DNA from: Macrostomum lignano
Taxonomy: Eukaryota
Direction of reading: 5' to 3'
Length of the DNA stretch: 64,000 bases
Assembly (NCBI GenBank): GCA_002269645.1
Contig: NIVC01000507.1
Location: 1-64,000, forward strand
Each line of letters starts with the position of its first letter. The first letter of the stretch is position 1. The notes under the pieces are model-generated. The model saw nothing but the letters and a program-made list of their open reading frames with translations. It ran no database searches and had not been told where the DNA came from. The translations under genes were made by a program, and so were the position numbers. Positions 1-39,041 of the stretch are shown piece after piece.

Positions 1-69
1 ATGCCCGAAAAAATAGCAATGATGTTTAGGTGAAAAGAGATCCCTTAATCAATTTTCAATTTTATAGAG

Positions 70-130
70 GAACAATTAGCAAATCGAAACGTCTCATATA
101 GTGGCCGTGCGTTTGAAAAATACTACATTG
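70..130 (+). CDS. Putative upstream coding exon of the YR gene (EQLANRNVSYSGRAFEKYYI-G)
   Basis: Polypyrimidine tract + AG (tttatag/ag, 61-69), open frame, strong phase-1 donor ATTG|gtaaga at 130/131, phase-compatible with the phase-1 acceptors downstream. Start of the gene not resolved; may lie outside the window. Confidence 0.35.
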
Positions 131-449
131 GTAAGAAAAAACATAATACTCTAAATCTTAAATGTACCTCCGTAAAAGCCTTGAAATTCCCTTGAAAGCG
201 AAAACTAAAACTTTGTAGAGATGGAAGAAAAGCAATTTCGCAGCATCTTCAAGCTTAAAAAACATCGATCCAATGCAGGTACTTTGACTGCAGAAACTGT
301 ATTTCACATAGAAAGCACATATTAACTATATTATTTACACATCAAACGTAGAAAAGAAAAGCACAAAAAAAACATTTTTAGTGGCAACGGTCGGACAGAA
401 AACAACACATTGCACTGGTATACAAGCAAAGCTCAAATGTGGAGCAATC

Positions 450-3400
450 ATTGGGACAACATTGTGCGGATGTGATGTTTGAGGCATTTATTGGGACGCA
501 CTTAATGGGACATGGAGTCTGTTATTTTTAACGCGGCTCTGGCTGTGACTAGAAAATGGTTCTTGTAGTTGAGCCAGCAAAGCATAGCTCTCTCTAAATA
601 AACAAAACAGAATAGTAGCTTTCTAAGTAGCTCGAGTTTGAGTTTGGGAATCTGTGAAACTTTGCTCAGCCAATGATTACGTTCATGAAGTGTGTCTACA
701 CTACACAACTCCTTTCACACAGCTTCTGAAGTCGAGAGTTCCGCTGACGCGTCGCGGATTGAGCCCAACTTGAATGCGGTCTCCGCAAGCAGACGCCACT
801 GGTTCAAGCCTTGTCGCTGAACTAGCTAGTGCCATTCGCCTGCTCAACAGCAGCCTCCAGCCGGCTTCAGCCAGACAGTTAGTCAGCTCCCAAGTGGTGC
901 TACAGAAAGTCATTCAAGCGAAAGTGCAAATGCTAAGAGGAAACGGCGATCTGCTCAAGGTGAGCACTGCATGAGCATTGCTTTGTCTGCATGAAGGTAC
1001 ATGTACTTTAAGCGGGAGTGTTTGGGAGCCTTGGCAAATAAGGCAATGGATATTTTGGGCGGGCATCGGCAGGACAGAAAAACACATACACTTGGGCACT
1101 TATTGGGACAACATTGTGCGGATGTGATGTTTGAGGCATTTATTGGGACGCACTTAATGGGACATGGAGTCTGTTATTTTTAACGCGGCTCTGGCTGTGA
1201 CTAGAAAATGGTTCTTGTAGTTGAGCCAGCAAAGCATAGCTCTCTCTAAATAAACAAAACAGAATAGTAGCTTTCTAAGTAGCTCGAGTTTGAGTTTGGG
1301 AATCTGTGAAACTTTGCTCAGCCAATGATTACGTTCATGAAGTGTGTCTACACTACACAACTCCTTTCACACAGCTTCTGAAGTCGAGAGTTCCGCTGAC
1401 GCGTCGCGGATTGAGCCCAACTTGAATGCGGTCTCCGCAAGCACAGACGCCACTGGTTCAAGCCTTGTCGCTGAACTAGCTAGTGCCATTCCGCCTGCTC
1501 AACAGCAGCCTCCAGCCGGCTTCAGCCAGACAGTTAGTCAGCTCCCAAGTGGTGCTACAGAAAGTCATTCAAGCGAAAGTGCAAATGCTAAGAGGAAACG
1601 GCGATCTGCTCAAGGTGAGCACTGCATGAGCATTGCTTTGTCTGCATGAAGGTACATGTACTTTAAGCGGGAGTGTTTGGGAGCCTTGGCAAATAAGGCA
1701 ATGGATATTTTGGGCGGGCATCGGCAGGACAGAAAAACACATACACTTGGGCACTTATTGGGACAACATTGTGCGGATGTGATGTTTGAGGCATTTATTG
1801 GGACGCACTTAATGGGACATGGAGTCTGTTATTTTTAACGCGGCTCTGGCTGTGACTAGAAAATGGTTCTTGTAGTTGAGCCAGCAAAGCATAGCTCTCT
1901 CTAAATAAACAAAACAGAATAGTAGCTTTCTAAGTAGCTCGAGTTTGAGTTTGGGAATCTGTGAAACTTTGCTCAGCCAATGATTACGTTCATGAAGTGT
2001 GTCTACACTACACAACTCCTTTGACACAGCTTCTGAAGTCGAGAGTTCCGCTGACGCGTCGCGGATTGAGCCCAACTTGAATGCGGTCTCCGCAAGCACA
2101 GACGCCACTGGTTCAAGCCTTGTCGCTGAACTAGCTAGTGCCATTCCGCCTGCTCAACAGCAGCCTCCAGCCGGCTTCAGCCAGACAGTTAGTCAGCTCC
2201 CAAGTGGTGCTACAGAAAGTCATTCAAGCGAAAGTGCAAATGCTAAGAGGAAACGGCGATCTGCTCAAGGTGAGCACTGCATGAGCATTGCTTTGTCTGC
2301 ATGAAGGTACATGTACTTTAAGCGGGAGTGTTTGGGAGCCTTGGCAAATAAGGCAATGGATATTTTGGGCGGGCATCGGCAGGACAGAAAAACACATACA
2401 CTTGGGCACTTATTGGGACAACATTGTGCGGATGTGATGTTTGAGGCATTTATTGGGACGCACTTAATGGGACATGGAGTCTGTTATTTTTAACGCGGCT
2501 CTGGCTGTGACTAGAAAATGGTTCTTGTAGTTGAGCCAGCAAAGCATAGCTCTCTCTAAATAAACAAAACAGAATAGTAGCTTTCTAAGTAGCTCGAGTT
2601 TGAGTTTGGGAATCTGTGAAACTTTGCTCAGCCAATGATTACGTTCATGAAGTGTGTCTACACTACACAACTCCTTTGACACAGCTTCTGAAGTCGAGAG
2701 TTCCGCTGACGCGTCGCGGATTGAGCCCAACTTGAATGCGGTCTCCGCAAGCACAGACGCCACTGGTTCAAGCCTTGTCGCTGAACTAGCTAGTGCCATT
2801 CCGCCTGCTCAACAGCAGCCTCCAGCCGGCTTCAGCCAGACAGTTAGTCAGCTCCCAAGTGGTGCTACAGAAAGTCATTCAAGCGAAAGTGCAAATGCTA
2901 AGAGGAAACGGCGATCTGCTCAAGGTGAGCACTGCATGAGCATTGCTTTGTCTGCATGAAGGTACATGTACTTTAAGCGGGAGTGTTTGGGAGCCTTGGC
3001 AAATAAGGCAATGGATATTTTGGGCGGGCATCGGCAGGACAGAAAAACACATACACTTGGGCACTTATTGGGACAACATTGTGCGGATGTGATGTTTGAG
3101 GCATTTATTGGGACGCACTTAATGGGACATGGAGTCTGTTATTTTTAACGCGGCTCTGGCTGTGACTAGAAAATGGTTCTTGTAGTTGAGCCAGCAAAGC
3201 ATAGCTCTCTCTAAATAAACAAAACAGAATAGTAGCTTTCTAAGTAGCTCGAGTTTGAGTTTGGGAATCTGTGAAACTTTGCTCAGCCAATGATTACGTT
3301 CATGAAGTGTGTCTACACTACACAACTCCTTTCACACAGCTTCTGAAGTCGAGAGTTCCGCTGACGCGTCGCGGATTGAGCCCAACTTGAATGCGGTCTC

Positions 3401-6400
3401 CGCAAGCACAGACGCCACTGGTTCAAGCCTTGTCGCTGAACTAGCTAGTGCCATTCCGCCTGCTCAACAGCAGCCTCCAGCCGGCTTCAGCCAGACAGTT
3501 AGTCAGCTCCCAAGTGGTGCTACAGAAAGTCATTCAAGCGAAAGTGCAAATGCTAAGAGGAAACGGCGATCTGCTCAAGGTGAGCACTGCATGAGCATTG
3601 CTTTGTCTGCATGAAGGTACATGTACTTTAAGCGGGAGTGTTTGGGAGCCTTGGCAAATAAGGCAATGGATATTTTGGGCGGGCATCGGCAGGACAGAAA
3701 AACACATACACTTGGGCACTTATTGGGACAACATTGTGCGGATGTGATGTTTGAGGCATTTATTGGGACGCACTTAATGGGACATGGAGTCTGTTATTTT
3801 TAACGCGGCTCTGGCTGTGACTAGAAAATGGTTCTTGTAGTTGAGCCAGCAAAGCATAGCTCTCTCTAAATAAACAAAACAGAATAGTAGCTTTCTAAGT
3901 AGCTCGAGTTTGAGTTTGGGAATCTGTGAAACTTTGCTCAGCCAATGATTACGTTCATGAAGTGTGTCTACACTACACAACTCCTTTGACACAGCTTCTG
4001 AAGTCGAGAGTTCCGCTGACGCGTCGCGGATTGAGCCCAACTTGAATGCGGTCTCCGCAAGCACAGACGCCACTGGTTCAAGCCTTGTCGCTGAACTAGC
4101 TAGTGCCATTCCGCCTGCTCAACAGCAGCCTCCAGCCGGCTTCAGCCAGACAGTTAGTCAGCTCCCAAGTGGTGCTACAGAAAGTCATTCAAGCGAAAGT
4201 GCAAATGCTAAGAGGAAACGGCGATCTGCTCAAGGTGAGCACTGCATGAGCATTGCTTTGTCTGCATGAAGGTACATGTACTTTAAGCGGGAGTGTTTGG
4301 GAGCCTTGGCAAATAAGGCAATGGATATTTTGGGCGGGCATCGGCAGGACAGAAAAACACATACACTTGGGCACTTATTGGGACAACATTGTGCGGATGT
4401 GATGTTTGAGGCATTTATTGGGACGCACTTAATGGGACATGGAGTCTGTTATTTTTAACGCGGCTCTGGCTGTGACTAGAAAATGGTTCTTGTAGTTGAG
4501 CCAGCAAAGCATAGCTCTCTCTAAATAAACAAAACAGAATAGTAGCTTTCTAAGTAGCTCGAGTTTGAGTTTGGGAATCTGTGAAACTTTGCTCAGCCAA
4601 TGATTACGTTCATGAAGTGTGTCTACACTACACAACTCCTTTGACACAGCTTCTGAAGTCGAGAGTTCCGCTGACGCGTCGCGGATTGAGCCCAACTTGA
4701 ATGCGGTCTCCGCAAGCACAGACGCCACTGGTTCAAGCCTTGTCGCTGAACTAGCTAGTGCCATTCCGCCTGCTCAACAGCAGCCTCCAGCCGGCTTCAG
4801 CCAGACAGTTAGTCAGCTCCCAAGTGGTGCTACAGAAAGTCATTCAAGCGAAAGTGCAAATGCTAAGAGGAAACGGCGATCTGCTCAAGGTGAGCACTGC
4901 ATGAGCATTGCTTTGTCTGCATGAAGGTACATGTACTTTAAGCGGGAGTGTTTGGGAGCCTTGGCAAATAAGGCAATGGATATTTTGGGCGGGCATCGGC
5001 AGGACAGAAAAACACATACACTTGGGCACTTATTGGGACAACATTGTGCGGATGTGATGTTTGAGGCATTTATTGGGACGCACTTAATGGGACATGGAGT
5101 CTGTTATTTTTAACGCGGCTCTGGCTGTGACTAGAAAATGGTTCTTGTAGTTGAGCCAGCAAAGCATAGCTCTCTCTAAATAAACAAAACAGAATAGTAG
5201 CTTTCTAAGTAGCTCGAGTTTGAGTTTGGGAATCTGTGAAACTTTGCTCAGCCAATGATTACGTTCATGAAGTGTGTCTACACTACACAACTCCTTTGAC
5301 ACACAGCTTCTGAAGTCGAGAGTTCCGCTGACGCGTCGCGGATTGAGCCCAACTTGAATGCGGTCTCCGCAAGCACAGACGCCACTGGTTCAAGCCTTGT
5401 CGCTGAACTAGCTAGTGCCATTCCGCCTGCTCAACAGCAGCCTCCAGCCGGCTTCAGCCAGACAGTTAGTCAGCTCCCAAGTGGTGCTACAGAAAGTCAT
5501 TCAAGCGAAAGTGCAAATGCTAAGAGGAAACGGCGATCTGCTCAAGGTGAGCACTGCATGAGCATTGCTTTGTCTGCATGAAGGTACATGTACTTTAAGC
5601 GGGAGTGTTTGGGAGCCTTGGCAAATAAGGCAATGGATATTTTGGGCGGGCATCGGCAGGACAGAAAAACACATACACTTGGGCACTTATTGGGACAACA
5701 TTGTGCGGATGTGATGTTTGAGGCATTTATTGGGACGCACTTAATGGGACATGGAGTCTGTTATTTTTAACGCGGCTCTGGCTGTGACTAGAAAATGGTT
5801 CTTGTAGTTGAGCCAGCAAAGCATAGCTCTCTCTAAATAAACAAAACAGAATAGTAGCTTTCTAAGTAGCTCGAGTTTGAGTTTGGGAATCTGTGAAACT
5901 TTGCTCAGCCAATGATTACGTTCATGAAGTGTGTCTACACTACACAACTCCTTTGACACAGCTTCTGAAGTCGAGAGTTCCGCTGACGCGTCGCGGATTG
6001 AGCCCAACTTGAATGCGGTCTCCGCAAGCACAGACGCCACTGGTTCAAGCCTTGTCGCTGAACTAGCTAGTGCCATTCCGCCTGCTCAACAGCAGCCTCC
6101 AGCCGGCTTCAGCCAGACAGTTAGTCAGCTCCCAAGTGGTGCTACAGAAAGTCATTCAAGCGAAAGTGCAAATGCTAAGAGGAAACGGCGATCTGCTCAA
6201 GGTGAGCACTGCATGAGCATTGCTTTGTCTGCATGAAGGTACATGTACTTTAAGCGGGAGTGTTTGGGAGCCTTGGCAAATAAGGCAATGGATATTTTGG
6301 GCGGGCATCGGCAGGACAGAAAAACACATACACTTGGGCACTTATTGGGACAACATTGTGCGGATGTGATGTTTGAGGCATTTATTGGGACGCACTTAAT

Positions 6401-9400
6401 GGGACATGGAGTCTGTTATTTTTAACGCGGCTCTGGCTGTGACTAGAAAATGGTTCTTGTAGTTGAGCCAGCAAAGCATAGCTCTCTCTAAATAAACAAA
6501 ACAGAATAGTAGCTTTCTAAGTAGCTCGAGTTTGAGTTTGGGAATCTGTGAAACTTTGCTCAGCCAATGATTACGTTCATGAAGTGTGTCTACACTACAC
6601 AACTCCTTTCACAGCTTCTGAAGTCGAGAGTTCCGCTGACGCGTCGCGGATTGAGCCCAACTTGAATGCGGTCTCCGCAAGCACAGACGCCACTGGTTCA
6701 AGCCTTGTCGCTGAACTAGCTAGTGCCATTCCGCCTGCTCAACAGCAGCCTCCAGCCGGCTTCAGCCAGACAGTTAGTCAGCTCCCAAGTGGTGCTACAG
6801 AAAGTCATTCAAGCGAAAGTGCAAATGCTAAGAGGAAACGGCGATCTGCTCAAGGTGAGCACTGCATGAGCATTGCTTTGTCTGCATGAAGGTACATGTA
6901 CTTTAAGCGGGAGTGTTTGGGAGCCTTGGCAAATAAGGCAATGGATATTTTGGGCGGGCATCGGCAGGACAGAAAAACACATACACTTGGGCACTTATTG
7001 GGACAACATTGTGCGGATGTGATGTTTGAGGCATTTATTGGGACGCACTTAATGGGACATGGAGTCTGTTATTTTTAACGCGGCTCTGGCTGTGACTAGA
7101 AAATGGTTCTTGTAGTTGAGCCAGCAAAGCATAGCTCTCTCTAAATAAACAAAACAGAATAGTAGCTTTCTAAGTAGCTCGAGTTTGAGTTTGGGAATCT
7201 GTGAAACTTTGCTCAGCCAATGATTACGTTCATGAAGTGTGTCTACACTACACAACTCCTTTGACACAGCTTCTGAAGTCGAGAGTTCCGCTGACGCGTC
7301 GCGGATTGAGCCCAACTTGAATGCGGTCTCCGCAAGCACAGACGCCACTGGTTCAAGCCTTGTCGCTGAACTAGCTAGTGCCATTCCGCCTGCTCAACAG
7401 CAGCCTCCAGCCGGCTTCAGCCAGACAGTTAGTCAGCTCCCAAGTGGTGCTACAGAAAGTCATTCAAGCGAAAGTGCAAATGCTAAGAGGAAACGGCGAT
7501 CTGCTCAAGGTGAGCACTGCATGAGCATTGCTTTGTCTGCATGAAGGTACATGTACTTTAAGCGGGAGTGTTTGGGAGCCTTGGCAAATAAGGCAATGGA
7601 TATTTTGGGCGGGCATCGGCAGGACAGAAAAACACATACACTTGGGCACTTATTGGGACAACATTGTGCGGATGTGATGTTTGAGGCATTTATTGGGACG
7701 CACTTAATGGGACATGGAGTCTGTTATTTTTAACGCGGCTCTGGCTGTGACTAGAAAATGGTTCTTGTAGTTGAGCCAGCAAAGCATAGCTCTCTCTAAA
7801 TAAACAAAACAGAATAGTAGCTTTCTAAGTAGCTCGAGTTTGAGTTTGGGAATCTGTGAAACTTTGCTCAGCCAATGATTACGTTCATGAAGTGTGTCTA
7901 CACTACACAACTCCTTTGACACAGCTTCTGAAGTCGAGAGTTCCGCTGACGCGTCGCGGATTGAGCCCAACTTGAATGCGGTCTCCGCAAGCACAGACGC
8001 CACTGGTTCAAGCCTTGTCGCTGAACTAGCTAGTGCCATTCCGCCTGCTCAACAGCAGCCTCCAGCCGGCTTCAGCCAGACAGTTAGTCAGCTCCCAAGT
8101 GGTGCTACAGAAAGTCATTCAAGCGAAAGTGCAAATGCTAAGAGGAAACGGCGATCTGCTCAAGGTGAGCACTGCATGAGCATTGCTTTGTCTGCATGAA
8201 GGTACATGTACTTTAAGCGGGAGTGTTTGGGAGCCTTGGCAAATAAGGCAATGGATATTTTGGGCGGGCATCGGCAGGACAGAAAAACACATACACTTGG
8301 GCACTTATTGGGACAACATTGTGCGGATGTGATGTTTGAGGCATTTATTGGGACGCACTTAATGGGACATGGAGTCTGTTATTTTTAACGCGGCTCTGGC
8401 TGTGACTAGAAAATGGTTCTTGTAGTTGAGCCAGCAAAGCATAGCTCTCTCTAAATAAACAAAACAGAATAGTAGCTTTCTAAGTAGCTCGAGTTTGAGT
8501 TTGGGAATCTGTGAAACTTTGCTCAGCCAATGATTACGTTCATGAAGTGTGTCTACACTACACAACTCCTTTGACACAGCTTCTGAAGTCGAGAGTTCCG
8601 CTGACGCGTCGCGGATTGAGCCCAACTTGAATGCGGTCTCCGCAAGCACAGACGCCACTGGTTCAAGCCTTGTCGCTGAACTAGCTAGTGCCATTCCGCC
8701 TGCTCAACAGCAGCCTCCAGCCGGCTTCAGCCAGACAGTTAGTCAGCTCCCAAGTGGTGCTACAGAAAGTCATTCAAGCGAAAGTGCAAATGCTAAGAGG
8801 AAACGGCGATCTGCTCAAGGTGAGCACTGCATGAGCATTGCTTTGTCTGCATGAAGGTACATGTACTTTAAGCGGGAGTGTTTGGGAGCCTTGGCAAATA
8901 AGGCAATGGATATTTTGGGCGGGCATCGGCAGGACAGAAAAACACATACACTTGGGCACTTATTGGGACAACATTGTGCGGATGTGATGTTTGAGGCATT
9001 TATTGGGACGCACTTAATGGGACATGGAGTCTGTTATTTTTAACGCGGCTCTGGCTGTGACTAGAAAATGGTTCTTGAGTTGAGCCAGCAAAGCATAGCT
9101 CTCTCTAAATAAACAAAACAGAATAGTAGCTTTCTAAGTAGCTCGAGTTTGAGTTTGGGAATCTGTGAAACTTTGCTCAGCCAATGATTACGTTCATGAA
9201 GTGTGTCTACACTACACAACTCCTTTGACACAGCTTCTGAAGTCGAGAGTTCCGCTGACGCGTCGCGGATTGAGCCCAACTTGAATGCGGTCTCCGCAAG
9301 CACAGACGCCACTGGTTCAAGCCTTGTCGCTGAACTAGCTAGTGCCATTCAGCCTGCTCAACAGCAGCCTCCAGCCGGCTTCAGCCAGACAGTTAATCAG
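450..9400. repeat. Tandem array of ~655-bp units, ~13.7 copies, near-identical
   Basis: Identical ORFs recur at 1001, 1656, 2311, 2966, 3621, 4276, 4931, 5588, 6243, 6896, 7551, 8206, 8861 (spacing 655, once 657, once 653). Homology starts at attgggacaacattgtgcgg (~450) and ends inside the YR ORF (~9400). Units differ by rare indels and one C/G SNP (ctcctttCac vs ctcctttGac). Confidence 0.98.
723..8819 (+). other. Array of 13 putative 240-nt symmetric cassette exons (80 aa, S/A/Q-rich, ending KRKRRSAQ), one per 655-bp unit
   Basis: Each unit has acceptor ctcctttgacacag|CTTCTG and donor CTGCTCAAG|gtgagc: exons 1375-1614, 2030-2269, 2685-2924, 3340-3579, 3995-4234, 4650-4889, 5307-5546, 5962-6201, 6615-6854, 7270-7509, 7925-8164, 8580-8819 (240 nt, phase 1-1, no stop). 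Unit 1 (723-959) has -2 and -1 deletions that give an in-frame TGA. The same acceptor opens the large YR exon at 9234. Splicing is not demonstrated. Confidence 0.6.
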
Positions 9401-12400
9401 CCCCAAGGTTGTCGCGAAATCGATCAGTTCCTTTGTGCACCTGTGGCGTATTGTTCTGAAGATGCAAACTTTGCGATTTTAAAACCGGTCTCGAATCCGA
9501 AGTCGTGCTGTGAGCCACATTTTGGGGCTCTGGCTTTTGCTGCTGATGATAGTGATCCATATCATCTGGAAAGCAATACTGGAACCGATTGTTCAGCTGG
9601 AGCTGTAGTGGGTTGCTCAAATTACGAGAATTTGGCCGCCGACAATTCGAATTTTTATCCTCAGATGAATGCCTTGTCTGTGGTTCAAGATTTTTCTGCG
9701 CATTCGATGCCGTCCCAACTCGTTGATTTTGTAACTGCGAAAGCTGAAGATGGTGATCAAGTGACCTTTTCGGCTAATGTCAATGTTAGTTCCGCGCGGA
9801 TTGAAGAAGAAAGTGTCTCAGTTACTCTACCTGTTTCCTTGAAGCCTGAGGATGACGCAGGATGCAGTGTTGTTTTGCAGAAGCTTGTCAGTTCGACGAC
9901 AAAGCTTCATTACTGCAAATATTGTGGCAAAATGTTGACGAAAATCTCTCGGCACTACAAAACCGCTCATAAAGCAGAGTCTGACGTTAAGCGCTTGCAG
10001 CAGATCCGCCGTAAGTCCATTCGTAGAAAGGCATTTAAGGCCCTTGAAAGCGAAGGCGATTATATTCACAATAAAATGGTTTTGGCAAAACGAGAAGGTG
10101 AATTAATAATTGCAAGGAGACAAAAGGACGATGAAAATTCTCCTGGGAGTTTTCTTCCCTGTCATCGATGCTTTCAATTCATAAAGAAGGATCTTCTCTA
10201 CCGCCACAGAAATGCATGCTCCGGTAGCCTATCTGAAATTATTAAGGAAGACGAGAATGACTCCGATGAAGACACTGAGAACTCTTCGCCCTCCGAGTCA
10301 GAGAGTGCAGAAGCGCGCCTAAAAAATCCTACGAACAATCACTACGTGCAGCTGTCTCGAATTCTGCTAAAAAATCCAGAGCCTGCTTCAAAACTTCTGG
10401 AACCAGATTCGGAACTCTTTAAGACAGTTCTCTCAAGACTCATTTGTGATGATCTGTTTGATACAATCTGCAAAGATGAGCTCTTACTTCGTTTAGGTGA
10501 TCGTTATTTGTCTAAGCAAAAAAAGGTGAACCGGCAGCACGTGTCTAGTAAAATCAGGGATGCAGCTCGTGTTTTTATTCAGCTACAGCAGTTGCATGGT
10601 GATTATAGCTTAAGACACTTTCTGCAACCACAGTATTTTGATGATTGGATCGAAGTTATCCGAAAGTTATCGAATGAGGCCCCAACATTCGCACTACGCA
10701 TGGGTCATTCAATACCGCATCTGTGCAATATCCTAATCGGTGAAGCGATTAGGACTTCTAATGATGGCCTTAAAAAGTCCGCATCTGACTTTCTTGAGCT
10801 GAAAAATACTGAGTACCACCATCTCGTTACTGCGAAGAGCCTCAAGACAATAAGTGAAAGAGCAGCACTTGTGCAGGACTGTGTACCGCTGACGGACGAC
10901 ATAGTAAAACTTTCCACTTTTATGAAGTCGGCGATTGTCGATAAAATCGAAGAGCTCAAGACAGGAACATTGGATTCAAATGTTCCTTTGTTGTACCGTG
11001 AACTAGTCTACCTAATCATGACAAAACTAACTTTTTTCAACCGGCGCCGATCCAGTGAGATTTCTCAAATGGTAATGGCGATGTTAGATGCAGCTTCGGC
11101 ATCTCACACGCAGGATGACCTGCATCAGTATTTGACGCCACTCGAGAAGGAACTCGCCAGCAGGTTAAAGGTCATAAATATATCAGGCAAAAGAGGACGA
11201 TCTGTGCCTATCGTTATCGATCGAATTTGTTGGGATGGACTGATGTGCCTAAAAGACTGTCGCGAGGCTGCCGGTGTAAGCCGAAAGAACGTATTTGTGT
11301 TTGCGATTCCTGGCTATGAACAATCCGTCTACAGATGTCCTGTGGCAATCGACAAAGTAGTGAAAATGAGCTCACTCCAACTGCAACGAGCGGATCTCCT
11401 TCGCTCAAGATTTTTAAGGAAGCATTGTGCGACTGTTTCGCAACTTCTTGACTTAAAAGACAATGAGCTAGATTGGCTAGCTCGCCATCTCGGCCATGAT
11501 ATTACTGTCCACAGACAGTTCTACAGATTACATCAAAATACTCTCGAGCTAGCAAAGGTTTCGAAGATTTTGGAGTTGATGGAGAGTGGGAACCTGAAGA
11601 AATTTAAAGGAAAGGGTCTGGAAGAAATAACATTAGAAGATTTATCAGAGCCGCCGTTGGATGACCATGATGAGACAGCAGAGTTATCGGCGGTGCCGGA
11701 CACTTCGGCCACAACAGCTGCTTCGACTTCGGCCACAACAGCTGCTTCGACTTCGGCCACAACAGTTGTTTCGACTTCGCCAACTTTCGCTTTGGGAACT
11801 GGTTCAGCCGCTACAACTAAAACAAGCGCAAAGAGACGCACAAAATCTGGTGAGTCAGTATATAGCTTAATTTGATTCATGCAGATACAAATATTTTTTA
11901 CTGCTCAAATAGATTGTTTATAAGAGGTTAGATATATTTTTCTGATCGCATTTTATCATATGTTAACGGTATATAATCGCATAGTGTCTAGCGAATCGTA
12001 TGCGATTAACTCAGTCAAAGTACATGCATTTACTGGAGTTGAAGAAAAAAGAAATCGCGTGAACATCGCATAGATACTCGTATAAGTTCATTTTGCCTGG
12101 GGCTTTTACTGTCCAAAAAAAACTTATGCAAATGCAAACATTTCTAAGCAGAGTGCACAATGCACATCTTAAAATTTCCAAATCATTTGGCCCTTTTAAT
12201 TGTATGCTAAGTTAATTATAAGAATTAAAACTTTTTGTGGACATGTTTTGCATACTTTCTGTGAACGTAAGCAGCAACCTCTTAGTCTATAAAATATGTG
12301 CTACCATTACAGCAAAGAAGCTGACCGACAGCCAAAAAAGCGACTTGCGCAAGGCATTTGCCAGCTTTCTAGCCAGCGGGGATCTTCCTGGCAAGCAAGT

Positions 12401-12491
12401 CATTTTAGAGCTTCGACCCGAATCTGTTGCTGCTGTTGACTGGCGCCAAATTAAAGACAATTTGCGCGTTGCGCTTTCAAAAAAGAAATAG
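9234..12491 (+). CDS. Tyrosine recombinase (phage-integrase fold) of Crypton-like animal YR elements; exons 9234-11849 and 12313-12491
   Basis: ORF 9203-11875 is uninterrupted. Zn-finger-like motifs CKYC...RHYKTAH and PCHRC...RHRNAC; YR catalytic layout FFNRRRSSE (Arg), SGKRGRSVP (Lys), LRSRFLRKHCAT (HxxR-equivalent Arg), LARHLGHDITVHRQFY (His, nucleophile Tyr). Phase-1 donor AAATCTG|gtgagt at 11849/50 matches phase-1 acceptor ccattacag|CA at 12312/13, adding AKKLTDSQ...LPGKQ...VDWRQIKDNLRVALSKKK*. Confidence 0.85.
11702..11780 (+). repeat. 24-bp coding repeat x3 (TSATTAAS) in YR C-terminal linker
   Basis: acttcggccacaacagctgcttcg repeated three times, third copy diverged. Confidence 0.9.
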
Positions 12492-13184
12492 CTAGTCGAA
12501 ATTTCTATTTTAAGAAAAGCAAATATTTAACTTTAGCTAATTTTAGCTAATTGGCTTACTTTAGCTCACAGATTCTAGAACAGCTAGATGAGCCACTGAA
12601 GCACAGCTATATACAACAGCTGAAATAAATGACTTTGATAACTTTAGAAGCCCAAGCTTGCAGGCGTAAACAACTTGCTGATTGGTCCAGCCATAATGTA
12701 CATTAGCCACTGAAATGTACATGGCAGATTTACCCTGGAACTACCGAGAAAGGCAATAAAAATTGGGTGGCGGGGCGGGGGTAGAGGTTCTGTGTGGAAT
12801 TTGAGGGTTTAAGCTTGGGGGGTAAAAGCCAATAAATAAACCTTGCCTTAGTTTGTCTTCAAAACTTCATTAAAATGCCTCGGTTAACTTAAACTACTAA
12901 ACTGAAAGTACCTTGCAGGCAAATGTGCTGAGTGAATCATCTAGTTTGTTCTAGTATCTGTGGTTTAATTACTAATTAAAGCTTAATGGAAGACAGGCAA
13001 AATTTGTAAAAATCCTTGGATCAAAAACTTTTTGCGGCTGAAATAACTAGTTACTAGATACTAGTTGCATAGCTCGAAGCTACTATTAGGTCGTTGATTC
13101 CGCGTGTCGAGCACAATTCTCTAATTTGTTTTTTTTAATAGCCACCTGGCTTAAAAACTGTGTTGTCATTCATTCAAAAATTTT

Positions 13185-13985
13185 ATCACCACCTGCTCTA
13201 AACATTGTGTTTCTACTTATTCAACGATTTTATTCGCCATCTGCTCTAAACATTGTGTTTCTACTTATTCAACGATTTTATTCGCCATCTGCTCTAAACA
13301 TTGTGTTTCTACTTATTCAACCATTTTATTCGCCACCTGCTCTAAACATTGTGTTTCTACTTATTCAACCATTTTATTCGCCACCTGCTCTAAACATTGT
13401 GTTTCTACTTATTCAACCATTTTATTCGCCACCTGCTCTAAACATTGTGTTTCTACTTATTCAACGATTTTATTCGCCACCTGCTCTAAACATTGTGTTT
13501 CTACTTATTCAACCATTTTATTCGCCACCTGCTCTAAACATTGTGTTTCTACTTATTCAACCATTTTATTCGCCACCTGCTCTAAACATTGTGTTTCTAC
13601 TTATTCAAAAATTTTATCGCCACCTGCTCTAAACATTGTGTTTCTACTTATTCAACCATTTTATTCGCCACCTGCTCTAAACATTGTGTTTCTACTTATT
13701 CAACCATTTTATTCGCCACCTGCTCTAAACATTGTGTTTCTACTTATTCAACCATTTTATTCGCCACCTGCTCTAAACATTGTGTTTCTACTTATTCAAC
13801 CATTTTATTCGCCACCTGCTCTAAACATTGTGTTTCTACTTATTCAACCATTTTATTCGCCACCTGCTCTAAACATTGTGTTTCTACTTATTCAACCATT
13901 TTATTCGCCACCTGCTCTAAACATTGTGTTTCTATTTATTCAACCATTTTATTCGCCACCTGCTCTAAACATTGTTTTTATTTAT
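13185..13985. repeat. 48-bp minisatellite, ~16.5 copies
   Basis: Unit ccattttattcgccacctgctctaaacattgtgtttctacttattcaa; explains ORFs 13126, 13589, 13638. Confidence 0.95.
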
Positions 13986-14221
13986 TCAAAACTTTTTTAT
14001 TACAAACATTCAAACATAAGTTGCAACTTTTTAAAAAAAATAAATTTGTTTCCCTTCAGTTTTGTTCCGTTTTCCAAAAGCCTCTTTATTTGTGGTGCCT
14101 CTTTATTTTACTTTATGAATTAAACATTCGCATATAAAATGATGGAAGCGTTCAGAAATTCTTCTATCTGGTTGATACATCCACTGGTTATTTATAGGCC
14201 TAGATATACTTCTATGGTAAA

Positions 14222-14660
14222 ATTGTTAGGGCAGCCCTTCCACACTAGCTATGGTGGGATTGTTGGGACAGCCCTATGCACACTGGCTATGGTGGGATTG
14301 TTGGGACAGCCCTATGTACACTGGCTATGGTGGGATTGTTGGGACAGCCCTATGCACACTGGCTATGGTGGGATTGTTGGGACAGCCCTATGCACACTGG
14401 CTATGGTGGGATTGTTGGGACAGCTCTATCCACACTAGCTTTGGTGGAATTGTTGGGACAGCCCTATGCACACTGGCTATGGTGGAATTGTTGGGACAGC
14501 CCTATGTACACTGGCTATGCTGGAATTGTTGGGACAGCCCTATGTACACTGGCTATGGTGGAATTGTTGGGACAGCCCTATGTACACTGGCTATGCTGGA
14601 ATTGTTGGGACAGCCCTATGTACACTGGCTATGCTGGAATTGTTGGGACAGCCCTATACT
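14222..14660. repeat. 38-bp minisatellite, ~11.5 copies
   Basis: Unit ctatggtgggattgttgggacagccctatgcacactgg; ORFs open in all three frames with a 38-aa period. Confidence 0.95.
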
Positions 14661-15280
14661 ATAGTGTGTGCTGGCTTCTGCTTCTGCTATAGTGTGGTTC
14701 ATTTCCGCATCCTTTTACGTAGCATTCTGTGGGTCCGAATAGCTGACATGTACCTTTTGAGTAATTCTAGTGATTGTGTCATAATCAATAAAGTACATTT
14801 TTATGAACAGTGGAGTTTCGCTACAGAATTGTTTTTTCCCAGTGGCACTAAATGTAGCAAATTTTGTTTATTCAGATCGTAAAATTTTTTTGATATGTGT
14901 CAATGTCGTTTGTCTTCGATAACCTTAAAGTCCCTTGCCATTTACCATCCTGTCTTCTATAATCTATGATCGCTGAAATTATCTGGTGAAATTTGACGCG
15001 CTGATATTATTGCCTTAAGTGGAATTCAGCAAGACACCAGGGTTTTTTAATTCTGTTTTAGACAAGTATACATGTACAATCTGTTGTGAGTTCAATGCAC
15101 CTCGAAAAATGCTTTCCAACTGTTTTCAGTAAGCCAAAAGCATGTTGTCAATAAAAATCGATTTGGTGGGTTGAAAATTGCCTGTGTGGGGACGTGTGTG
15201 TGTGTGATTTTTCGTGTGTCGAAGCAGTCCCAATATGTGCAAGCTTTTGCACACTTGGCCAATAAGTGCCTCGTGCACGT

Positions 15281-15303
15281 TTGTGTGTGTGTGTGTGTGT
15301 GTG
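15281..15303. repeat. (GT)n microsatellite
   Basis: Direct reading; a shorter tract lies at ~15193-15205. Confidence 0.9.
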
Positions 15304-16191
15304 TTCCGCCAGTGTAGTGGATTAGGCTTAGGCATGCACAAGTAACCTGCCGTCTGGCTGCGTCTACTGCAGACGCCACTTTGACAGCGATGACAGCAAA
15401 TAGTACGCTCGTAATATTTGCTGTCATTCTATCAATCAATTTACCAGACTATCAGTACATCCTGAGCACATCCAAGCGCTGCATGCTACCCAAATTACAC
15501 TCACAATGGGAATAGCAAATGCCAATCCAATAATGTATGCTTTATTTAAAATTCACAATTGCTAGACATGATGTTAGACAAAAAGACAAGACCATACGAT
15601 TTTACGAAGAAAGTATGCAATTATTGTTGAGATTTCGGTGTACTGAACACGGGCCCTTAAAAGAGTACTGAGTGTAAAAGTTTTTTCCAGCCGTTTGACT
15701 CAAGTCAGCCAACCGCAACAAGAGAAAAGTGAGGTTGCCACACAAATGAATGGAAACATGATAGTTGGAGAGAATAGAAGAAGATCTTGAAAGGCAAAGA
15801 AGATCTAGATTCCATCGATCTAAACTGCTTCTATTTTGCGTTTCCTGAGCTGCATTTCATTTTTTGCTCTTTTCTGTTCAAAGCTAACTAGAAACATTGC
15901 TTCATCTCCATTCCTGCATTACTCATTCATGCTCTTACAAGAGTTGAAGGCACAAGTTTTTAACGTGCTTTGCACAAGCGAAGTGAAAAAAACTAAGTCA
16001 CATAGTTTTCAACGAGTCTACACGGCACGATAGAACATAATTATAGTTGATTAATTCTGTAATATATGCACTTAGTTTCTGCACTACTGTTAGTAGTCTT
16101 TGCTTGAAAAAAAAAACATTAGTGCTTCGGTTGGATAAGAAGTTCGTGCGATTGTATTCACAGGTATGGAAATTAGGGCAAAACCAGCAAA

Positions 16192-17105: not shown

Positions 17106-19311
17106 TCAAGCCTCAATCATTTCCGAATCGATTGTTGCCTGCGAGCCAGCAGAATCGCCGCGTGCTTTGTACCGGATAATACGAAATGAGCAGCACCGAC
17201 GCCTGACCACGATTATTACTATTACTAGCAGGACTAGCACTAGGAAGACCCCACAAGAGAGCGAGACTATTAATATCAAACTTAACTGATGGCTTTCTGG
17301 AGCAGAGTATGACGTGGTGACGCTGACGGTTGAATCTGATTGGCTGGAAGGGTATGAAACTGAACTTGTAACGATGCTTGAAGCTGATTGGCTGGAAGGG
17401 TACGAAATTGAACTTGTAACGATGCTTGAAGCTGATTGGCTGGTTGGCTGAATGGAAGACGCAGTGGCAGCGCTAGATCCACTGCAATTGTCTGGCAGAG
17501 TAAAGTTGAACACAGACTGTCCGGCAAGTTGCGGCGGTCCGGCGCAGAGCCATCTGGTCAAATCGGGAATTCGCTCTCTCACCCCGCTGTTGTGCAGAGC
17601 CAGTCTAAGCCAGGCGAGCTCGCAGTCGCATCTGAACGGATTCCCGGCCGCTTTCAGCCATTCGAAACTGCTGCCGTTAAATTGGAGCAACATTGGCAAC
17701 GGATTGACCGAGGCTCCGTCCGTTCCACCGATGGTAGTCAGGCGCGACGAGGACACGTCCAGCTGGACTAGCTTAGCTGGCATCGGGCCAGCCCAGCCCG
17801 TCAGTGGCGTCGCAGCCATAGACAGTCGGCGGAGTTTGTCCAATCCGGCCAACGTTTGAGGTGACAGGTGCGAAATCGACGAACCATCTAAGATCAGGTC
17901 GGTCAAGTAGCCGCCGACTCCAGCCAGAGCGCCGTCTTCGATGTGCAGCAAGCCCGGACAGTTGGCCAAGTCTAGGAGACTCAACCTGGGAAGACGACCC
18001 GCCGGTAGCAGGTCCGCTGACAGGCGAGTCAGACCGGCTGATGCTCGCAGGAACAGCGAGATGAAACGGTTAGAAAACTTTGTGGACTGAAATAAATAAG
18101 GATTAGGTTGGGATGTTTTTGTGTAGTTACTCTGGAAAGTAAACCATCACTTGGGGGTTGGGGGTCGCTATGGATTTCATGGTGAAGGGGGACAAGGCCA
18201 AGAAATCTACAAAACTAAATTCCTACATTGTTTTCAGAATCGGTGTCGTTAGCACTCATTTTGGCGCCGCAGGCACTCATTTTGGCGCTGCAGACACTCA
18301 TTTGGCGCCGCAGGCACTCATTTTGGCGCCGCAGGCATTCATTTTGGCGCCGCAGGCACTCCTTTTGGCGCCGCAGGCACTCATTTTGGCGCCGCAGGCA
18401 CTCATTTTGGCGCCGCAGGCATTCATTTTGGCGCCGCAGGCACTCATTTTGGCGCCGCAGGCACTCATTTTGGCGCCGCAGGCACTCATTTTGGCGCCGC
18501 AGGCACTCAGACATTGGCATGCCCCGCCCTTAGTTTCTAGGGGGGGGGGCATGGGGGATCTTGATGGGGGATTAGAAATGCAGTATTATCTCAAAGCTAA
18601 AGACTTTACCTGAAACAGTTCGATCAGATTTTCTCCTGTAACTGAGTTGTCGCTTAGGTCCAGGCTCCTCAAAGTTTGCGCCAGATCTGTCAGTGTTCTG
18701 TTCTCAATGCACTGCAGACTCACTGAGCTCATCTTTAGACTAGACAGATCTTTGCTGTTCTTCAAATTTGCGAACACCTTCCGAGATAGGGTCGGCCACT
18801 GATTGCCGCTCAATGAGACGACTGTGAGCTCGGCGCAGTGCAGGTAGGAGTCCGGAAAGACCTCATTATTGATTTGATTATCGTCCAAAATCAGTCGCTG
18901 CAATTTTGGCGCAAACTGGCACACCTGCGGCAGAGAAGCCAGCCGATTCTGCGACAGGTACAGGCGGCGAAGAGAGCGCAGGCCACGCAGCGATTCGTTG
19001 CCCAGCAGTGAGAGTCCGTTACCGTTCAGGTAGAGATCGGTCAACCGGTTCAGGCCGGGCTCAAACGCACCATCAGGTATGCTGGCAATCTTGTTTGCCT
19101 GAAGAAACAGCTTGCTTGTGCGATTCGATAAACCTTGGGGAATCCTCGTCAGCCCCTGACTTTGACAGTCAGTCTCAATAGTATCGTCAGATAGGACTTT
19201 GCATTGGCAGTCCTTTGGGCATGTGTCAGTACTTGCCAGACTCTCAGTGTGTAGCAATAAGAGTGCTAGAAAGCACAGTAAAACAAAAGGGATAGAAATT
19301 CTGAGTAGCAT
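17106..19311 (-). CDS. LRR single-pass transmembrane protein, 560 aa; exons 19311-18610 and 18086-17106
   Basis: Signal peptide MLLRISIPFVLLCFLALLLL, LRRNT CPKDCQC...DC, LxxLxLxxN repeats, LRRCT NPFRCDCELAWL, S/T-rich stalk, TM LILIVSLSCGVFLVLVLLVIVIIVV, short tail. Phase-0 intron TTTCAG|gtaaag ... atttcag|TCC joins the frames. Confidence 0.9.
18250..18512. repeat. 21-bp minisatellite (~12 copies) in LRR gene intron
   Basis: Unit cactcattttggcgccgcagg. Confidence 0.95.
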
Positions 19312-19769
19312 CTTTGGACCGAAGAACTGCTATATGTAGTTTATAGTTGGCCAACTCCTATATATATGTAGCTACTCTCGACAATTTCCAGTAAATTTTG
19401 GCTTGAAAGAACATTTCCAATGATAGAGATAAGGATCGGTCGAAAGCGTGCAAAGTGGTCGAGCTCTCCTAAAAAATGTGACAAAAACAGCTAGTTACAG
19501 AAAGTGGACAGTGAAATTCGGTGTGCTCATGCCTGGAACAGATTCCTGGAAATCAAGCGAGCTTCCAAGAGTTGTCAGGTGCACCCACGGTTACTGTACA
19601 GTCCTGGCGTGATTCTAACTTGATAAATTTTATCAAACATGTGGCGACTCGGCAGGTTGAGTACGTTGAAAATTGCACGAGAAAATGCCGTAAGTCAACC
19701 TACGAGGGTAAGTCAAAAACTAATGATAATTTTGTTATCATTTTGATTTACCAGCAGAAATCTCGCAGG

Positions 19770-29161: not shown

Positions 29162-29164
29162 AGA

Positions 29165-29578
<414 letters not shown>

Positions 29579-38183: not shown

Positions 38184-39041
38184 CTAGCGATGCTCCACTG
38201 ACAAGTTCTGAAATTTGAAGCCGGAGCCAGCGCCAAACAGCTGCTCCGTATCCGCCCGGAACGGCGCCTCCACAACGACGCGACCGTCGCTGCGCAGCCG
38301 AGCCGTCATCCTGGCCAGGTCCAGGCCGGACGGCAGGTCGAATTCGTCGCGGAATTCCCGGAAAGAGGCCTTCCCGGCGCTGCGCGAATGACGCTGGCCG
38401 TGCACGACGAGGCGAGCGCCGCCGTCGACTGTAGAGATTCGAACGTCGGCTGGAGAGAACTCGCAGCCTAGATCTATAGTCAGCTGATAGACGTTCAACC
38501 TTTTGATTGTCGATAGCTGCTGTTGCTGCTGCTGATGCTGCTGCGGCTGCTGCTGTTGCTGCGGTTGAATTGTAAAACTGTTCACCGTCAGCATTGGCGA
38601 TGTTGACTTGGCCGAACCGCTGGAAGTCTGATGCTCTAGCCGATACCTTGGAGGAACAGCTGGAGCGCTGACCACGAGCTGATTATTGATCACTACGGAG
38701 CGCAGCTGACCAGCGTCAACGTTGTCCGGCAGGGTGAACTGTTCCTGGAATGACACGCAACCCTGCTGTCCACCGCCCTGGCCATCCAGACTGGTGCTTC
38801 CGGCAACCTGAACGCTACGATCTCCAATCAAACTGGTGCGCAGGTCTTCCGGTGTGTAACCCTGCACGTCGAAGATCACCTTGTAGAGCACGGAACCGTC
38901 CGCCTGACGCTCCCAGTGACCGCGAATGTGATCAGGTCCACCAAGACCGCGCAGAGCCGGTGAGGTGGGCGATGTCGCTGAATAAGAAGAGTATTGCTGC
39001 CTGCCCAACGCCTGATCCGGTCGGCGGAAGAAGTCAGCCAT
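38184..39041 (-). CDS. Small heat-shock protein with two alpha-crystallin domains (p40/Tsp36-type)
   Basis: ACD1 YKVIFDVQGYTPEDL...FQEQFTLPDNVD..QLRS...LVVSAP; ACD2 YQLTIDLG.EFSPADV...FREFRDEFDLPSGLD...RLRSDGRVVVEAP; polyQ linker. Acceptor ttttcag| at ~39066 implies an upstream exon, so the start may differ. Confidence 0.85.
   Translation of the reverse strand: MADFFRRPDQALGRQQYSSYSATSPTSPALRGLGGPDHIRGHWERQADGSVLYKVIFDVQGYTPEDLRTSLIGDRSVQVAGSTSLDGQGGGQQGCVSFQEQFTLPDNVDAGQLRSVVINNQLVVSAPAVPPRYRLEHQTSSGSAKSTSPMLTVNSFTIQPQQQQQPQQHQQQQQQLSTIKRLNVYQLTIDLGCEFSPADVRISTVDGGARLVVHGQRHSRSAGKASFREFRDEFDLPSGLDLARMTARLRSDGRVVVEAPFRADTEQLFGAGSGFKFQNLSVEHR

What the first reader, a model, noticed from the sequence alone, without database searches (positions are those of the whole stretch)
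450..12491. Tyrosine recombinase gene with an amplified array of in-frame cassette exons
Seen: the 655-bp tandem unit is intron plus a 240-nt exon bounded by ctcctttgacacag| and |gtgagc, phase 1-1 and stop-free in 12 of 13 copies; the 14th acceptor opens the 2616-nt YR exon. Seen: indels in units 8, 10 and 14 fall in intron sequence, and only unit 1 breaks the exon. Inference: splicing could give YRs with 0-12 N-terminal 80-aa S/A/Q-rich modules, each carrying an NLS-like KRKRR (up to ~960 extra aa). I know of no Crypton/YR gene described with a tandem exon array, though I cannot check the literature.
Basis: partly seen in the sequence, partly recalled or inferred. Interest (0 to 1): 0.88.

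Follow-up and report, generated by a model that had tools for sequence, protein, structure and literature searches.

The report
Microsatellite-targeting flatworm Crypton with repeated exons
The "gene" is the recombinase gene of a very young, apparently mobile Crypton-type DNA transposon of the flatworm Macrostomum lignano that inserts cleanly into (TG)n microsatellites. A 655-bp intron-plus-exon block inside that gene has been amplified to 8-19 in-frame copies, a real but probably merely tolerated oddity.

Summary
Window 444-9,410 contains 13 full units and one partial unit of 655 bp, at 99-100% identity. Each unit carries a 240-nt, phase 1-1, stop-free exon bounded by AG|...|GTGAGC. The last acceptor opens a 2,616-nt exon (9234-11849), and a final exon follows at 12313-12491.

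The interpretation needs reframing. This is not a host gene but a transposon. The same roughly 15-21 kb element sits at six or more loci with unrelated flanks. Both ends abut (TG)n, and paralogous or allelic empty sites show an uninterrupted (TG)32 where the filled site has (TG)12-element-(TG)21.

The protein family keeps the R..K..R..H..Y residues, and its predicted fold matches XerH best. Microsatellite targeting is the published hallmark of CryptonV.

Cassette number differs between copies: 0 in an older copy and in diverged relatives, and 8, 9, 9, at least 10, and 13 or 19 in the young copies.

The GenBank gene model, built from RNA-seq, uses exactly the predicted cassette-to-cassette and cassette-to-large-exon junctions. 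Older predicted proteins chain 9 and 16 cassettes.

There is no sign of selection on the cassettes. Intron and exon are equally identical between units, and one frameshifted unit is shared by two copies. The "broken" unit 1 is probably a contig-end assembly error.

Verdict: a new variant of a known kind, of moderate interest.

The parts
1..15283 (+). Window part of the transposon. The element starts 1,649 bp upstream of window position 1, which is off this contig, and ends at ...CGTGCACGTTTG (15283).
   Evidence: Homology with five other loci stops sharply at both ends. The 3' end was read directly.
68..130 (+). Coding exon 3 of the recombinase gene (63 nt, phase 1-1).
   Evidence: Canonical AG/GT sites with a frame continuous with exons 1-2 upstream and exon 4. 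Identical in all array-bearing copies.
219..278 (+). Coding exon 4 (60 nt, phase 1-1). It ends ...KLKKHRSNA and is the last exon before the array.
   Evidence: In the array-less copy C1317 this exon is followed by one intron and then the large exon.
444..9410 (+). Tandem array of 13 full units and one partial unit of 655 bp. Each unit is about 415 nt of intron plus a 240-nt exon.
723..959 (+). Cassette exon 1, 237 nt in this contig, with three 1-nt deletions and a stop in frame. This is probably a contig-end assembly error.
   Evidence: The same unit is 240 nt and open in C5096, C1385, C1424, C1750 and C1917.
1375..8819 (+). Twelve identical 240-nt cassette exons at 1375-1614, 2030-2269, 2685-2924, 3340-3579, 3995-4234, 4650-4889, 5307-5546, 5962-6201, 6615-6854, 7270-7509, 7925-8164 and 8580-8819. 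Each encodes 80 aa ending ANAKRKRRSAQ.
   Evidence: The junctions are present in P0003, P0053 and P0054.
9234..11849 (+). Large exon (2,616 nt). It encodes an S/A/Q-rich start, two C2H(C/H)-type zinc-finger motifs, the core-binding and catalytic domains of a tyrosine recombinase, and an ATTAASTS repeat (24-bp repeat at 11702-11779).
   Evidence: It is identical in all six array-bearing copies.
12313..12491 (+). Last coding exon (AKKLTDSQKSDLRKAF...SKKK, stop TAG).
   Evidence: Its first 8 residues end the GenBank model P0003.
13133..13989 (+). 48-bp satellite (17.9 copies) in the non-coding 3' part of the element.
   Evidence: It is present in all copies.
14212..14657 (+). 38-bp satellite (11.8 copies). 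Each unit contains TTGGGACA, the motif also found at the 5' terminus and in every 655-bp unit.
15225..15283 (+). 3' terminal region, an imperfect inverted repeat of the 5' terminus.
   Evidence: Local alignment score 39, against 18.8 +/- 3.4 for shuffles, with 0 of 500 shuffles reaching it.
15282..15304 (+). (TG)n tract flanking the 3' end, part of the microsatellite into which the element inserted.
   Evidence: Empty sites were found for two other copies.

Best explanation
The region is most of one copy of an autonomous, very recently active tyrosine-recombinase DNA transposon of Macrostomum lignano. It is Crypton-like and behaves like the microsatellite-specific CryptonV group.

Shown:
- The element has sharp ends at six or more unrelated loci.
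- It lies inside (TG)n tracts without a target-site duplication, and allelic or homeologous empty sites carry the intact tract.
- It contains one multi-exon gene: exons 1-4, the large zinc-finger plus recombinase exon, and a last exon.
- It carries no reverse transcriptase.

Inferred mechanism of movement: the recombinase joins the two ends into a circle whose junction is (TG)n flanked by imperfect inverted arms, and then recombines that junction conservatively with a genomic (TG)n.

The array is an intragenic, exon-containing tandem repeat. A 655-bp block was amplified by unequal exchange or replication slippage. The block consists of the distal part of intron 4, the first 176 nt of the large exon, and about 140 nt of unknown origin that supplies 64 nt of reading frame and a GTGAGC donor.

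Every unit keeps the large exon's acceptor and ends in phase 1. Any number of units can therefore be spliced in without breaking the frame. Each adds an 80-aa, low-complexity segment ending in KRKRR between the small N-terminal region and the zinc-finger/recombinase body.

The cassettes are spliced in at least some transcripts; this rests on the public RNA-seq-based model. I think the array is a tolerated by-product rather than an adaptation. The ancestral element lacked it, and copy number drifts from 8 to 19.
For: Organism and model:
- The best hit is M. lignano PAA46037.1, at 100% identity.

Mobility:
- There are 7 full-length copies.
- Homology ends sharply at both ends next to (TG)n.
- The flanks of the C1917 and C1424 insertions are contiguous on other contigs.
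- The empty site has (TG)32 and the filled site has (TG)12 + element + (TG)21.
- The six array-bearing copies have identical 2,616-nt exons, and exons 1-4 and the last exon are also identical among the array-bearing contigs that contain them.

Recombinase:
- Conserved R, K, R, H and Y residues.
- AlphaFold model with pLDDT 81.9.
- The top six Foldseek PDB hits are XerH, with probability 0.94-1.0, followed among the more probable of the weak matches below them (E above 1) by topoisomerase IB.
- Weak PF00589 hits in relatives.
- There is no other long open frame in the element outside the satellites.

Array:
-.
- Array-less state in C1317 (99%) and in the 88-92% relatives on C751, C3070 and C1267.

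Splicing:
- P0003 junctions and the annotation method.
- P0053 and P0054 chain 16 and 9 cassettes. P0055 contains the exon 1-exon 2 junction that I predicted independently.

Literature:
- Crypton model and termini (PMC3212892).
- Active Cryptons with clean excision and a target matching the terminus (PMC9977147).
- CryptonV inserts in microsatellites (PMC8869645).
Against: - The window protein itself has no Pfam or PDB sequence hit.
- Foldseek E-values are only 3e-3 to 3e-2, with low global TM scores (0.26-0.36).
- The residue three positions before R740, normally His, is Arg here and Thr in most relatives.
- Membership of CryptonV could not be tested by sequence, because no Repbase sequences were available.
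- No circular junction, excision footprint or RNA read was seen directly.
- P0003 is 5'-partial and starts inside a cassette, so the number of cassettes per mRNA is unknown.
- P0053 and P0054 may be largely ab initio predictions.
- Array lengths in a PacBio assembly of near-identical 655-bp units may be inexact. The same locus reads 13 cassettes in C507 and 19 in C5096 and C1385.
Confidence: 0.8

Rival explanations
1. The array behaves as intronic satellite DNA. The functional mRNA joins exon 4 directly to the large exon, and cassette inclusion is rare, aberrant or non-productive.
For: - Array-less copies are the ancestral state and have the same open frame.
- A 1-nt deletion in the penultimate cassette is shared by the C1750 and C1917 copies. 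Full inclusion would break the frame there.
- All acceptors are identical and have a weak pyrimidine tract.
Against: - The RNA-seq-guided GenBank model contains both a cassette-to-cassette and a cassette-to-large-exon junction.
- The donor CAAG|GTGAGC is close to consensus.
- The exons are 240 nt with 415-nt introns, which is ordinary for exon definition.
Confidence: 0.25
2. The array is selected for. One version is that the repeated 80-aa KRKRR modules improve nuclear import or multimerisation of the recombinase. The other is that the terminus-like TTGGGAC motifs in every unit act as extra recombinase-binding sites that regulate transposition.
For: - Five of the six young insertion loci carry arrays, so the array-bearing form is the one that spread.
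- The start of each unit resembles the inverted 3' terminus. The score is 35 against 21 +/- 3, with 0 of 300 shuffles reaching it.
- The motif AGGCATTTnTTGGGAC is shared with the 5' terminus.
- TTGGGAC occurs 16 times on one strand of the array-less element, against 2+2 times in the other 48 kb.
Against: - There is no differential conservation of exon versus intron, and copy number is unconstrained at 8-19.
- A frameshifted unit persists in two copies.
- The spread could be a single burst from one master copy.
- The protein already has basic stretches at both ends.
Confidence: 0.15
3. It is a single-copy or domesticated host recombinase gene whose exons were amplified. This is the reading implied by the first-stage title.
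For: The gene has a multi-exon structure with consistent phases, and it survived the annotation's repeat filter.
Against: - Identical copies occur at unrelated loci with sharp ends and matching empty sites.
- The catalytic residues are retained, unlike in domesticated DUF3504 genes. No DUF3504 hit was found.
Confidence: 0.03
4. The long array is an assembly over-expansion of one or two units.
For: - One locus is represented by contigs with 13 and 19 cassettes.
- Contig ends in the array are error-rich.
- The window contig begins inside the element.
Against: - Eight or more units appear on seven contigs at five loci, with locus-specific variant patterns.
- Proteins predicted from the earlier ML2 assembly carry 9 and at least 16 cassettes. 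The 9-cassette one has the variant pattern of C1917.
Confidence: 0.05

Closest known systems
CryptonV (Kapitonov and Jurka 2012, Repbase Reports 12:2034, as cited in PMC8869645)
   Same: A DNA transposon encoding a tyrosine recombinase, with some families inserting specifically into microsatellites. The group was described from cnidarians, and Acropora proteins are among the closest homologues here at 31% identity.
   Different: Sequence membership could not be tested because no Repbase sequences were available. No exon-containing tandem array is mentioned in the papers I could read. The host here is a flatworm.
Cryptons in general (Goodwin et al. 2003; Kojima and Jurka 2011, PMC3212892) and the active CryptonF-1_cRei (PMC9977147)
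   Same: The only catalytic protein is a tyrosine recombinase. There is no reverse transcriptase. Short identical sequences at both termini match the target. Copy number is low. Integration and excision are clean, consistent with a circular intermediate.
   Different: - The terminal direct repeat here is a variable-length (TG)n tract rather than 4-6 bp.
- There is an imperfect inverted repeat of about 55 nt at the ends, whereas animal Cryptons were reported to have none.
- The gene has six or more exons.
- There is no DUF3504 or GCR1_C similarity.
Human LPA kringle IV-2 repeat (from my own knowledge, not checked here)
   Same: A multi-hundred-bp to kb tandem unit made of intron plus in-frame exon(s). 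Copy number varies between alleles, and each copy adds a protein module, giving size-variable proteins.
   Different: LPA is a host gene with a folded module and a known phenotype. Here the module is low-complexity, the gene belongs to a transposon, and inclusion of all units is unproven.
Repeat-targeting tyrosine recombinases of endogenous nimaviruses (PMC10871703)
   Same: Eukaryotic recombinases with a C2H2 zinc-binding region that integrate specifically into simple repeats, namely telomeric (TAACC)n.
   Different: Those are giant viral elements and a different recombinase family. No similarity was tested here.
Internal tandem repeats of other transposons, such as the SVA VNTR and the subterminal repeats of CACTA elements (from my own knowledge)
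   Same: Variable-length tandem arrays carried inside a mobile element.
   Different: Those arrays are non-coding. Here each unit is a spliceable in-frame exon of the element's own enzyme.

Membership tests
Tyrosine recombinase superfamily | Catalytic residues R, K, (H)xxR, H/W and the Tyr nucleophile in the canonical order and spacing. | tested here: met
   R617, K664, R740, H766 and Y775 are invariant or nearly so in 36 homologues, and the H-to-Y spacing is 9 residues. The first His of HxxR is Arg here and Thr in most relatives, so one secondary position departs from the canon.
Tyrosine recombinase superfamily | Two-domain fold (core-binding plus catalytic) resembling solved recombinases. 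| tested here: met
   The model has pLDDT 81.9. The top six Foldseek PDB hits are XerH, with probability 0.94-1.0 and E from 3e-3 to 3e-2, followed among the more probable of the weak matches below them (E above 1) by topoisomerase IB. Global TM scores are low (0.26-0.36), as expected if the orientation of the two domains differs.
Tyrosine recombinase superfamily | Significant match to a curated profile (PF00589 or related). | tested here: inconclusive
   The window protein gives no hit. Four of 36 relatives hit PF00589; the best is 2.2e-5 at 24.7 bits, against a cut-off of 27.1.
Crypton DNA transposons | A mobile, multicopy element whose only enzyme is a tyrosine recombinase, with no reverse transcriptase or RNase H. 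| tested here: met
   Seven full-length copies at six or more loci. There are no other long open frames outside the satellites.
Crypton DNA transposons | The same short sequence at both termini, matching the target, with insertion without a true target-site duplication. | tested here: met
   (TG)n is present at both ends of every copy. The empty site has (TG)32 and the filled site has (TG)12 + (TG)21.
Crypton DNA transposons | Excision and integration through a circular intermediate. | not testable with these tools
   This needs junction PCR or reads. Only the end architecture is consistent with it.
CryptonV group | Target specificity for microsatellites. | tested here: met
   criterion from PMC8869645.
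CryptonV group | Recombinase clusters with Repbase CryptonV proteins. | not testable with these tools
   No Repbase sequences were available. Only cnidarian homologues at 31% identity were seen.
Domesticated Crypton genes (DUF3504: ZMYM2-4, QRICH1, KCTD1, KIAA1958) | A single orthologous locus, DUF3504 profile match, and loss of the catalytic tetrad. | tested here: not met
   No DUF3504 hit. The catalytic residues are kept. Insertion is polymorphic.
DIRS/Ngaro retrotransposons | Reverse transcriptase/RNase H together with split or inverted long terminal repeats. | tested here: not met
   No such open frame or Pfam hit in the element.

The most novel reading that the evidence does not exclude
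The recombinase's own activity on terminus-like sites in intron 4 created the array, and the array is kept because it tunes transposition. It could do so as a bank of internal binding sites, or by making a length-variable, multi-NLS enzyme. Cassette number would then act as a fast-mutating rheostat of element activity in a model animal where this can be tested.
Probability: 0.12. Interest if true: 0.8.

Novelty: new variant of a known kind. Interest (0 to 1): 0.55.

Why it matters
Cryptons are the least understood class of eukaryotic DNA transposons. Activity has been observed directly only in Chlamydomonas (PMC9977147), and animal Cryptons were described as having no recognisable ends.

Here a laboratory flatworm with working transgenesis carries identical copies, matched filled and empty sites, a defined (TG)n target and a readable end architecture. 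That combination makes the integration mechanism directly testable. It also points to a eukaryotic recombinase with a simple, abundant genomic target.

The exon array is, as far as I could find, an undescribed way for a transposon gene to vary. It is an in-frame, copy-number-variable exon repeat inside the element's own enzyme.

The array also matters practically. The 80-aa module inflates predicted proteins; UniProt entries consisting almost entirely of 9-16 cassettes carry misleading names. It also breaks assemblies: the window's contig starts inside the element.

Tried and rejected
- Sequence searches of the large-exon protein against Pfam, PDB sequences and PHROGs found no recombinase. Identity had to rest on conserved residues, fold and relatives.
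- I tested whether the cassette's last 64 nt, its donor and the start of its intron derive from exon 4 and its intron, which would make the array a simple exon 4 / large-exon unequal crossover. Only the last ~60 nt of that piece align with the intron upstream of the array. The first ~140 nt score no better than shuffles (256 of 300 shuffles reach the score). Their source is unknown. A genome search with this piece was saturated by the array copies.
- A first automatic search for an exon chain from the upstream ATG found nothing because I had misplaced the exon 1 donor. Re-reading it as AT|GTAAGT gave a continuous frame, and P0055 later confirmed it.
- The exact look-up of contigs encoding P0003 returned nothing.
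I therefore could not ask whether the 31-32% paralogue families (C1010 and C1677 groups) also target microsatellites. Their 1.5-kb flanks contain no dinucleotide tracts.
- The 114-aa minus-strand frames in each unit have no Pfam match and were dismissed.
- No paper linking M. lignano and Cryptons was found.
Full report
**What is in the sequence**

The window is the first 64 kb of contig C507 of a 764-Mb, 5,269-contig assembly. The best protein match is a 100% identical Macrostomum lignano entry (PAA46037.1, 'BOX15_Mlig014457g5, partial'). Assembly size and contig count agree with Mlig_3_7 (PMC5730564).

From 444 to about 9,410 there are 13 full copies and one partial copy of a 655-bp unit at 99-100% identity. 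Each unit holds a 240-nt exon, for example 1375-1614, bounded by ...cacag| and |gtgagc. It reads in phase 1 as 80 aa, ASEVESS...ANAKRKRRSAQ.

The fourteenth acceptor opens a 2,616-nt exon (9234-11849), whose donor is AAATCTG|GTGAGT. A last exon runs from 12313 to 12491 and ends in TAG.

**The gene is longer than the window**

Other copies show that the repeated sequence begins 1,649 bp before window position 1. In that stretch an ATG-initiated exon of 239 nt (donor AT|GTAAGT) and a 62-nt exon precede the window's exons at 68-130 and 219-278.

All phases fit. The spliced frame is open from that ATG to the TAG at 12491. It gives 1,072 aa without cassettes and 80 aa more for each cassette.

The exon 1-exon 2 junction that I inferred appears independently in a UniProt model, P0055, which fuses a neighbouring cadherin exon to it.

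**It is a transposon, not a host gene**

Seven full-length copies exist. Pairwise comparison shows that homology stops sharply at both ends and that the flanks are unrelated between copies. The exceptions are C507, C5096 and C1385, which share flanks and represent one locus.

Every copy starts (TG)n-TTTGTGCATTAGGCATTTCTTGGGAC... and ends ...GCCTCGTGCACGTTTG-(TG)n.

For two insertions I found contigs on which the two flanks are contiguous. At the C1917 site the empty copies read ...cccctattt(TG)32gaggaaacc. The filled copy reads ...cccctattt(TG)12-element-(TG)21gaggaaacc. This is a conservative insertion into a microsatellite without a target-site duplication.

The six array-bearing copies have identical 2,616-nt exons, and their small exons and splice sites are identical wherever the contig includes them. 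The spread is therefore very recent.

The two termini form an imperfect inverted repeat of about 55 nt (score 39 against 18.8 +/- 3.4 for shuffles, 0 of 500 reaching it). In a circularised element, inverted arms would flank the (TG)n tract, which is the usual layout of a tyrosine-recombinase core site. The circle itself is an inference.

**The enzyme**

The window protein has no significant Pfam or PDB sequence match. It belongs to a family of uncharacterised proteins from corals, oysters, beetles and many fishes at 26-35% identity.

Across 36 members the invariant or near-invariant residues include R617, E620, G663-K664, L739-R740-K741, G765-H766, R772 and Y775. That is the R-K-R-H-Y set in canonical order, with 9 residues between His and Tyr.

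An AlphaFold model of residues 400-835 has pLDDT 81.9. It finds XerH as its six best PDB matches, with probability 0.94-1.0, followed among the more probable of the weak matches below them (E above 1) by type IB topoisomerases. Four relatives give weak PF00589 hits.

There is no DUF3504 match and no reverse transcriptase. Two conserved zinc-finger-like motifs lie N-terminal of the recombinase.

**Comparison with what is known**

Cryptons are defined by a tyrosine recombinase as sole enzyme, short identical sequences at both ends that match the target, and a proposed circular intermediate (PMC3212892; PMC8969392). Activity with clean excision was first observed in Chlamydomonas (PMC9977147).

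Some CryptonV families, described from cnidarians, insert specifically into microsatellites (PMC8869645 citing Kapitonov and Jurka 2012). The present element meets the tested Crypton criteria and the CryptonV target criterion. Sequence membership could not be tested.

I found no paper on Cryptons in M. lignano, and none describing an exon-containing tandem array in a Crypton.

**The array**

| Contig | Cassettes |
|---|---|
| C507 | 13 |
| C5096 | 19 |
| C1385 | 19 |
| C1424 | 9 |
| C1750 | 8 |
| C1917 | 9 |
| C3062 | at least 10 (contig starts in the array) |
| C1317 | 0 |

C1317 is about 99% identical to the others, differs by 20 nt in the large exon and carries a nested 743-bp insertion. 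The 88-92% relatives on C751, C3070 and C1267 also lack the array. The array-less state is therefore ancestral.

Units differ at only two substituted positions:
- A Pro/Gln codon that is Gln in the first one or two units, as in the large exon.
- A G/C in the acceptor tract.

This edge-versus-interior pattern is typical of arrays homogenised by unequal exchange.

Single-base deletions cluster at contig ends. The one clear exception is a deletion in the penultimate cassette that C1750 and C1917 share; it would break the frame if that cassette is included.

Compared with the array-less copy, the unit consists of about 510 nt of ancestral sequence (distal intron 4 plus the first 176 nt of the large exon) and about 140 nt with no detectable source. 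The extra piece supplies the last 64 nt of the cassette, including KRKRR, together with the donor.

The symmetry of phases follows from this construction: the acceptor is the same as the large exon's and the donor happens to fall in phase 1. It need not reflect selection.

**Evidence for splicing**

The GenBank protein reads ...ANAKRKRRSAQ|one full cassette|large exon...KRRTKS|AKKLTDSQ. It therefore uses the predicted cassette-to-cassette, cassette-to-large-exon and large-to-last-exon junctions.

That annotation was built from STAR-mapped RNA-seq with StringTie and TACO and from de novo transcripts (PMC5730564). The model is 5'-partial, so it does not say how many cassettes an mRNA carries.

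Two UniProt models from the earlier ML2 assembly chain 16 and 9 cassettes. They show that a second assembly also contains long arrays, although the two assemblies share the PacBio reads. They are weaker as expression evidence.

**How it most likely works**

The element moves by recombinase-mediated exchange between its (TG)n-containing junction and genomic (TG)n tracts. The insertion is shown; the mechanism is inferred.

The array arose once in the youngest lineage and then expanded and contracted by unequal exchange. The genome is unusually rich in tandem repeats: 15% of the genome according to PMC5730564, and the window alone holds a 238-bp array of 19 units plus many others. The array is tolerated because any number of units keeps the frame.

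I rate an adaptive role as possible but unsupported. The leads for it are that the array-bearing form is the one that spread, and that each unit carries a terminus-like motif pair.

**Verdict**

The feature is a new variant of a known kind: a Crypton, probably of the CryptonV type.

The most valuable part is not the cassette array itself. It is the combination of identical copies, matched empty sites and a defined microsatellite target in an experimentally tractable animal.

Noticed in passing
window 1; C5096:1-1019 and C1385 (same locus): The element at this locus lies immediately downstream of a cadherin exon (...WVNASYNVA|gtgagt). A UniProt cadherin model (P0055, A0A1I8J8U0) is fused to transposon exons 1-2. 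The insertion may therefore sit inside a cadherin gene, and the published model is chimeric.
   Followed up: partly
window 1-720, C3062:1-1400, C1385 last ~4 kb: Single-base deletions pile up near contig ends that fall inside the array. Contigs C507, C3062 and C1385 all break within this element, so the array appears to be a cause of assembly fragmentation.
   Followed up: partly
window 8964-9024 and every unit; 14264-14650; element 5' end (off-window): The motif TTGGGAC(A) occurs 16 times on the + strand of the array-less element (11 in the 38-bp satellite, 3 near the 5' end, 2-3 per 655-bp unit), against 2+2 times in the other 48 kb. AGGCATTTnTTGGGAC is shared by the 5' terminus and the unit. 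It is a candidate protein-binding site.
   Followed up: partly
C1317:23483-24226 (locus L037 region), corresponding to window ~12680: The older, array-less copy carries a nested 743-bp insertion with terminal inverted repeats (agagctcgaacggg...cccgttcgagctct) and a duplicated target (about ACTTGCTGAT). This looks like a MITE-like element.
   Followed up: no
genome contigs C1010, C850, C1364 and C1677, C29, C89, C1122, C2070, C2773, C3100, C416: Two further families of intact 627-840-aa open frames, 31-32% identical to this recombinase, each occur in several near-identical copies. M. lignano therefore seems to host several young Crypton-like families.
   Followed up: no
window 22376-26959: A 238-bp satellite with 19.3 copies at 98% identity, flanked by 68/139-bp relatives. 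The window also holds 35-, 51- and 15-bp arrays, (ACAG)107 at 29149-29576 and (TATC)78 at 57953-58266.
   Followed up: no
window 17106-19329 (-), 38184-39104 (-), 62481-63380 (+): The neighbouring open frames have leucine-rich-repeat, Hsp20/alpha-crystallin and retrotransposon-gag Pfam matches respectively.
   Followed up: partly
UniProt A0A1I8J7S7 (P0053) and A0A1I8HFW... (P0054): These database proteins, made almost entirely of the 80-aa cassette, are named 'SPOC domain-containing' and 'Kazal-like domain-containing'. They also carry precomputed Pfam labels (PF01632, PF15884) that look spurious.
   Followed up: no
window 11702-11779: A 24-bp in-frame repeat (3.2 copies) encodes TSATTAAS repeats near the C-terminus of the large exon. 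This is a second, small coding tandem repeat in the same gene.
   Followed up: no
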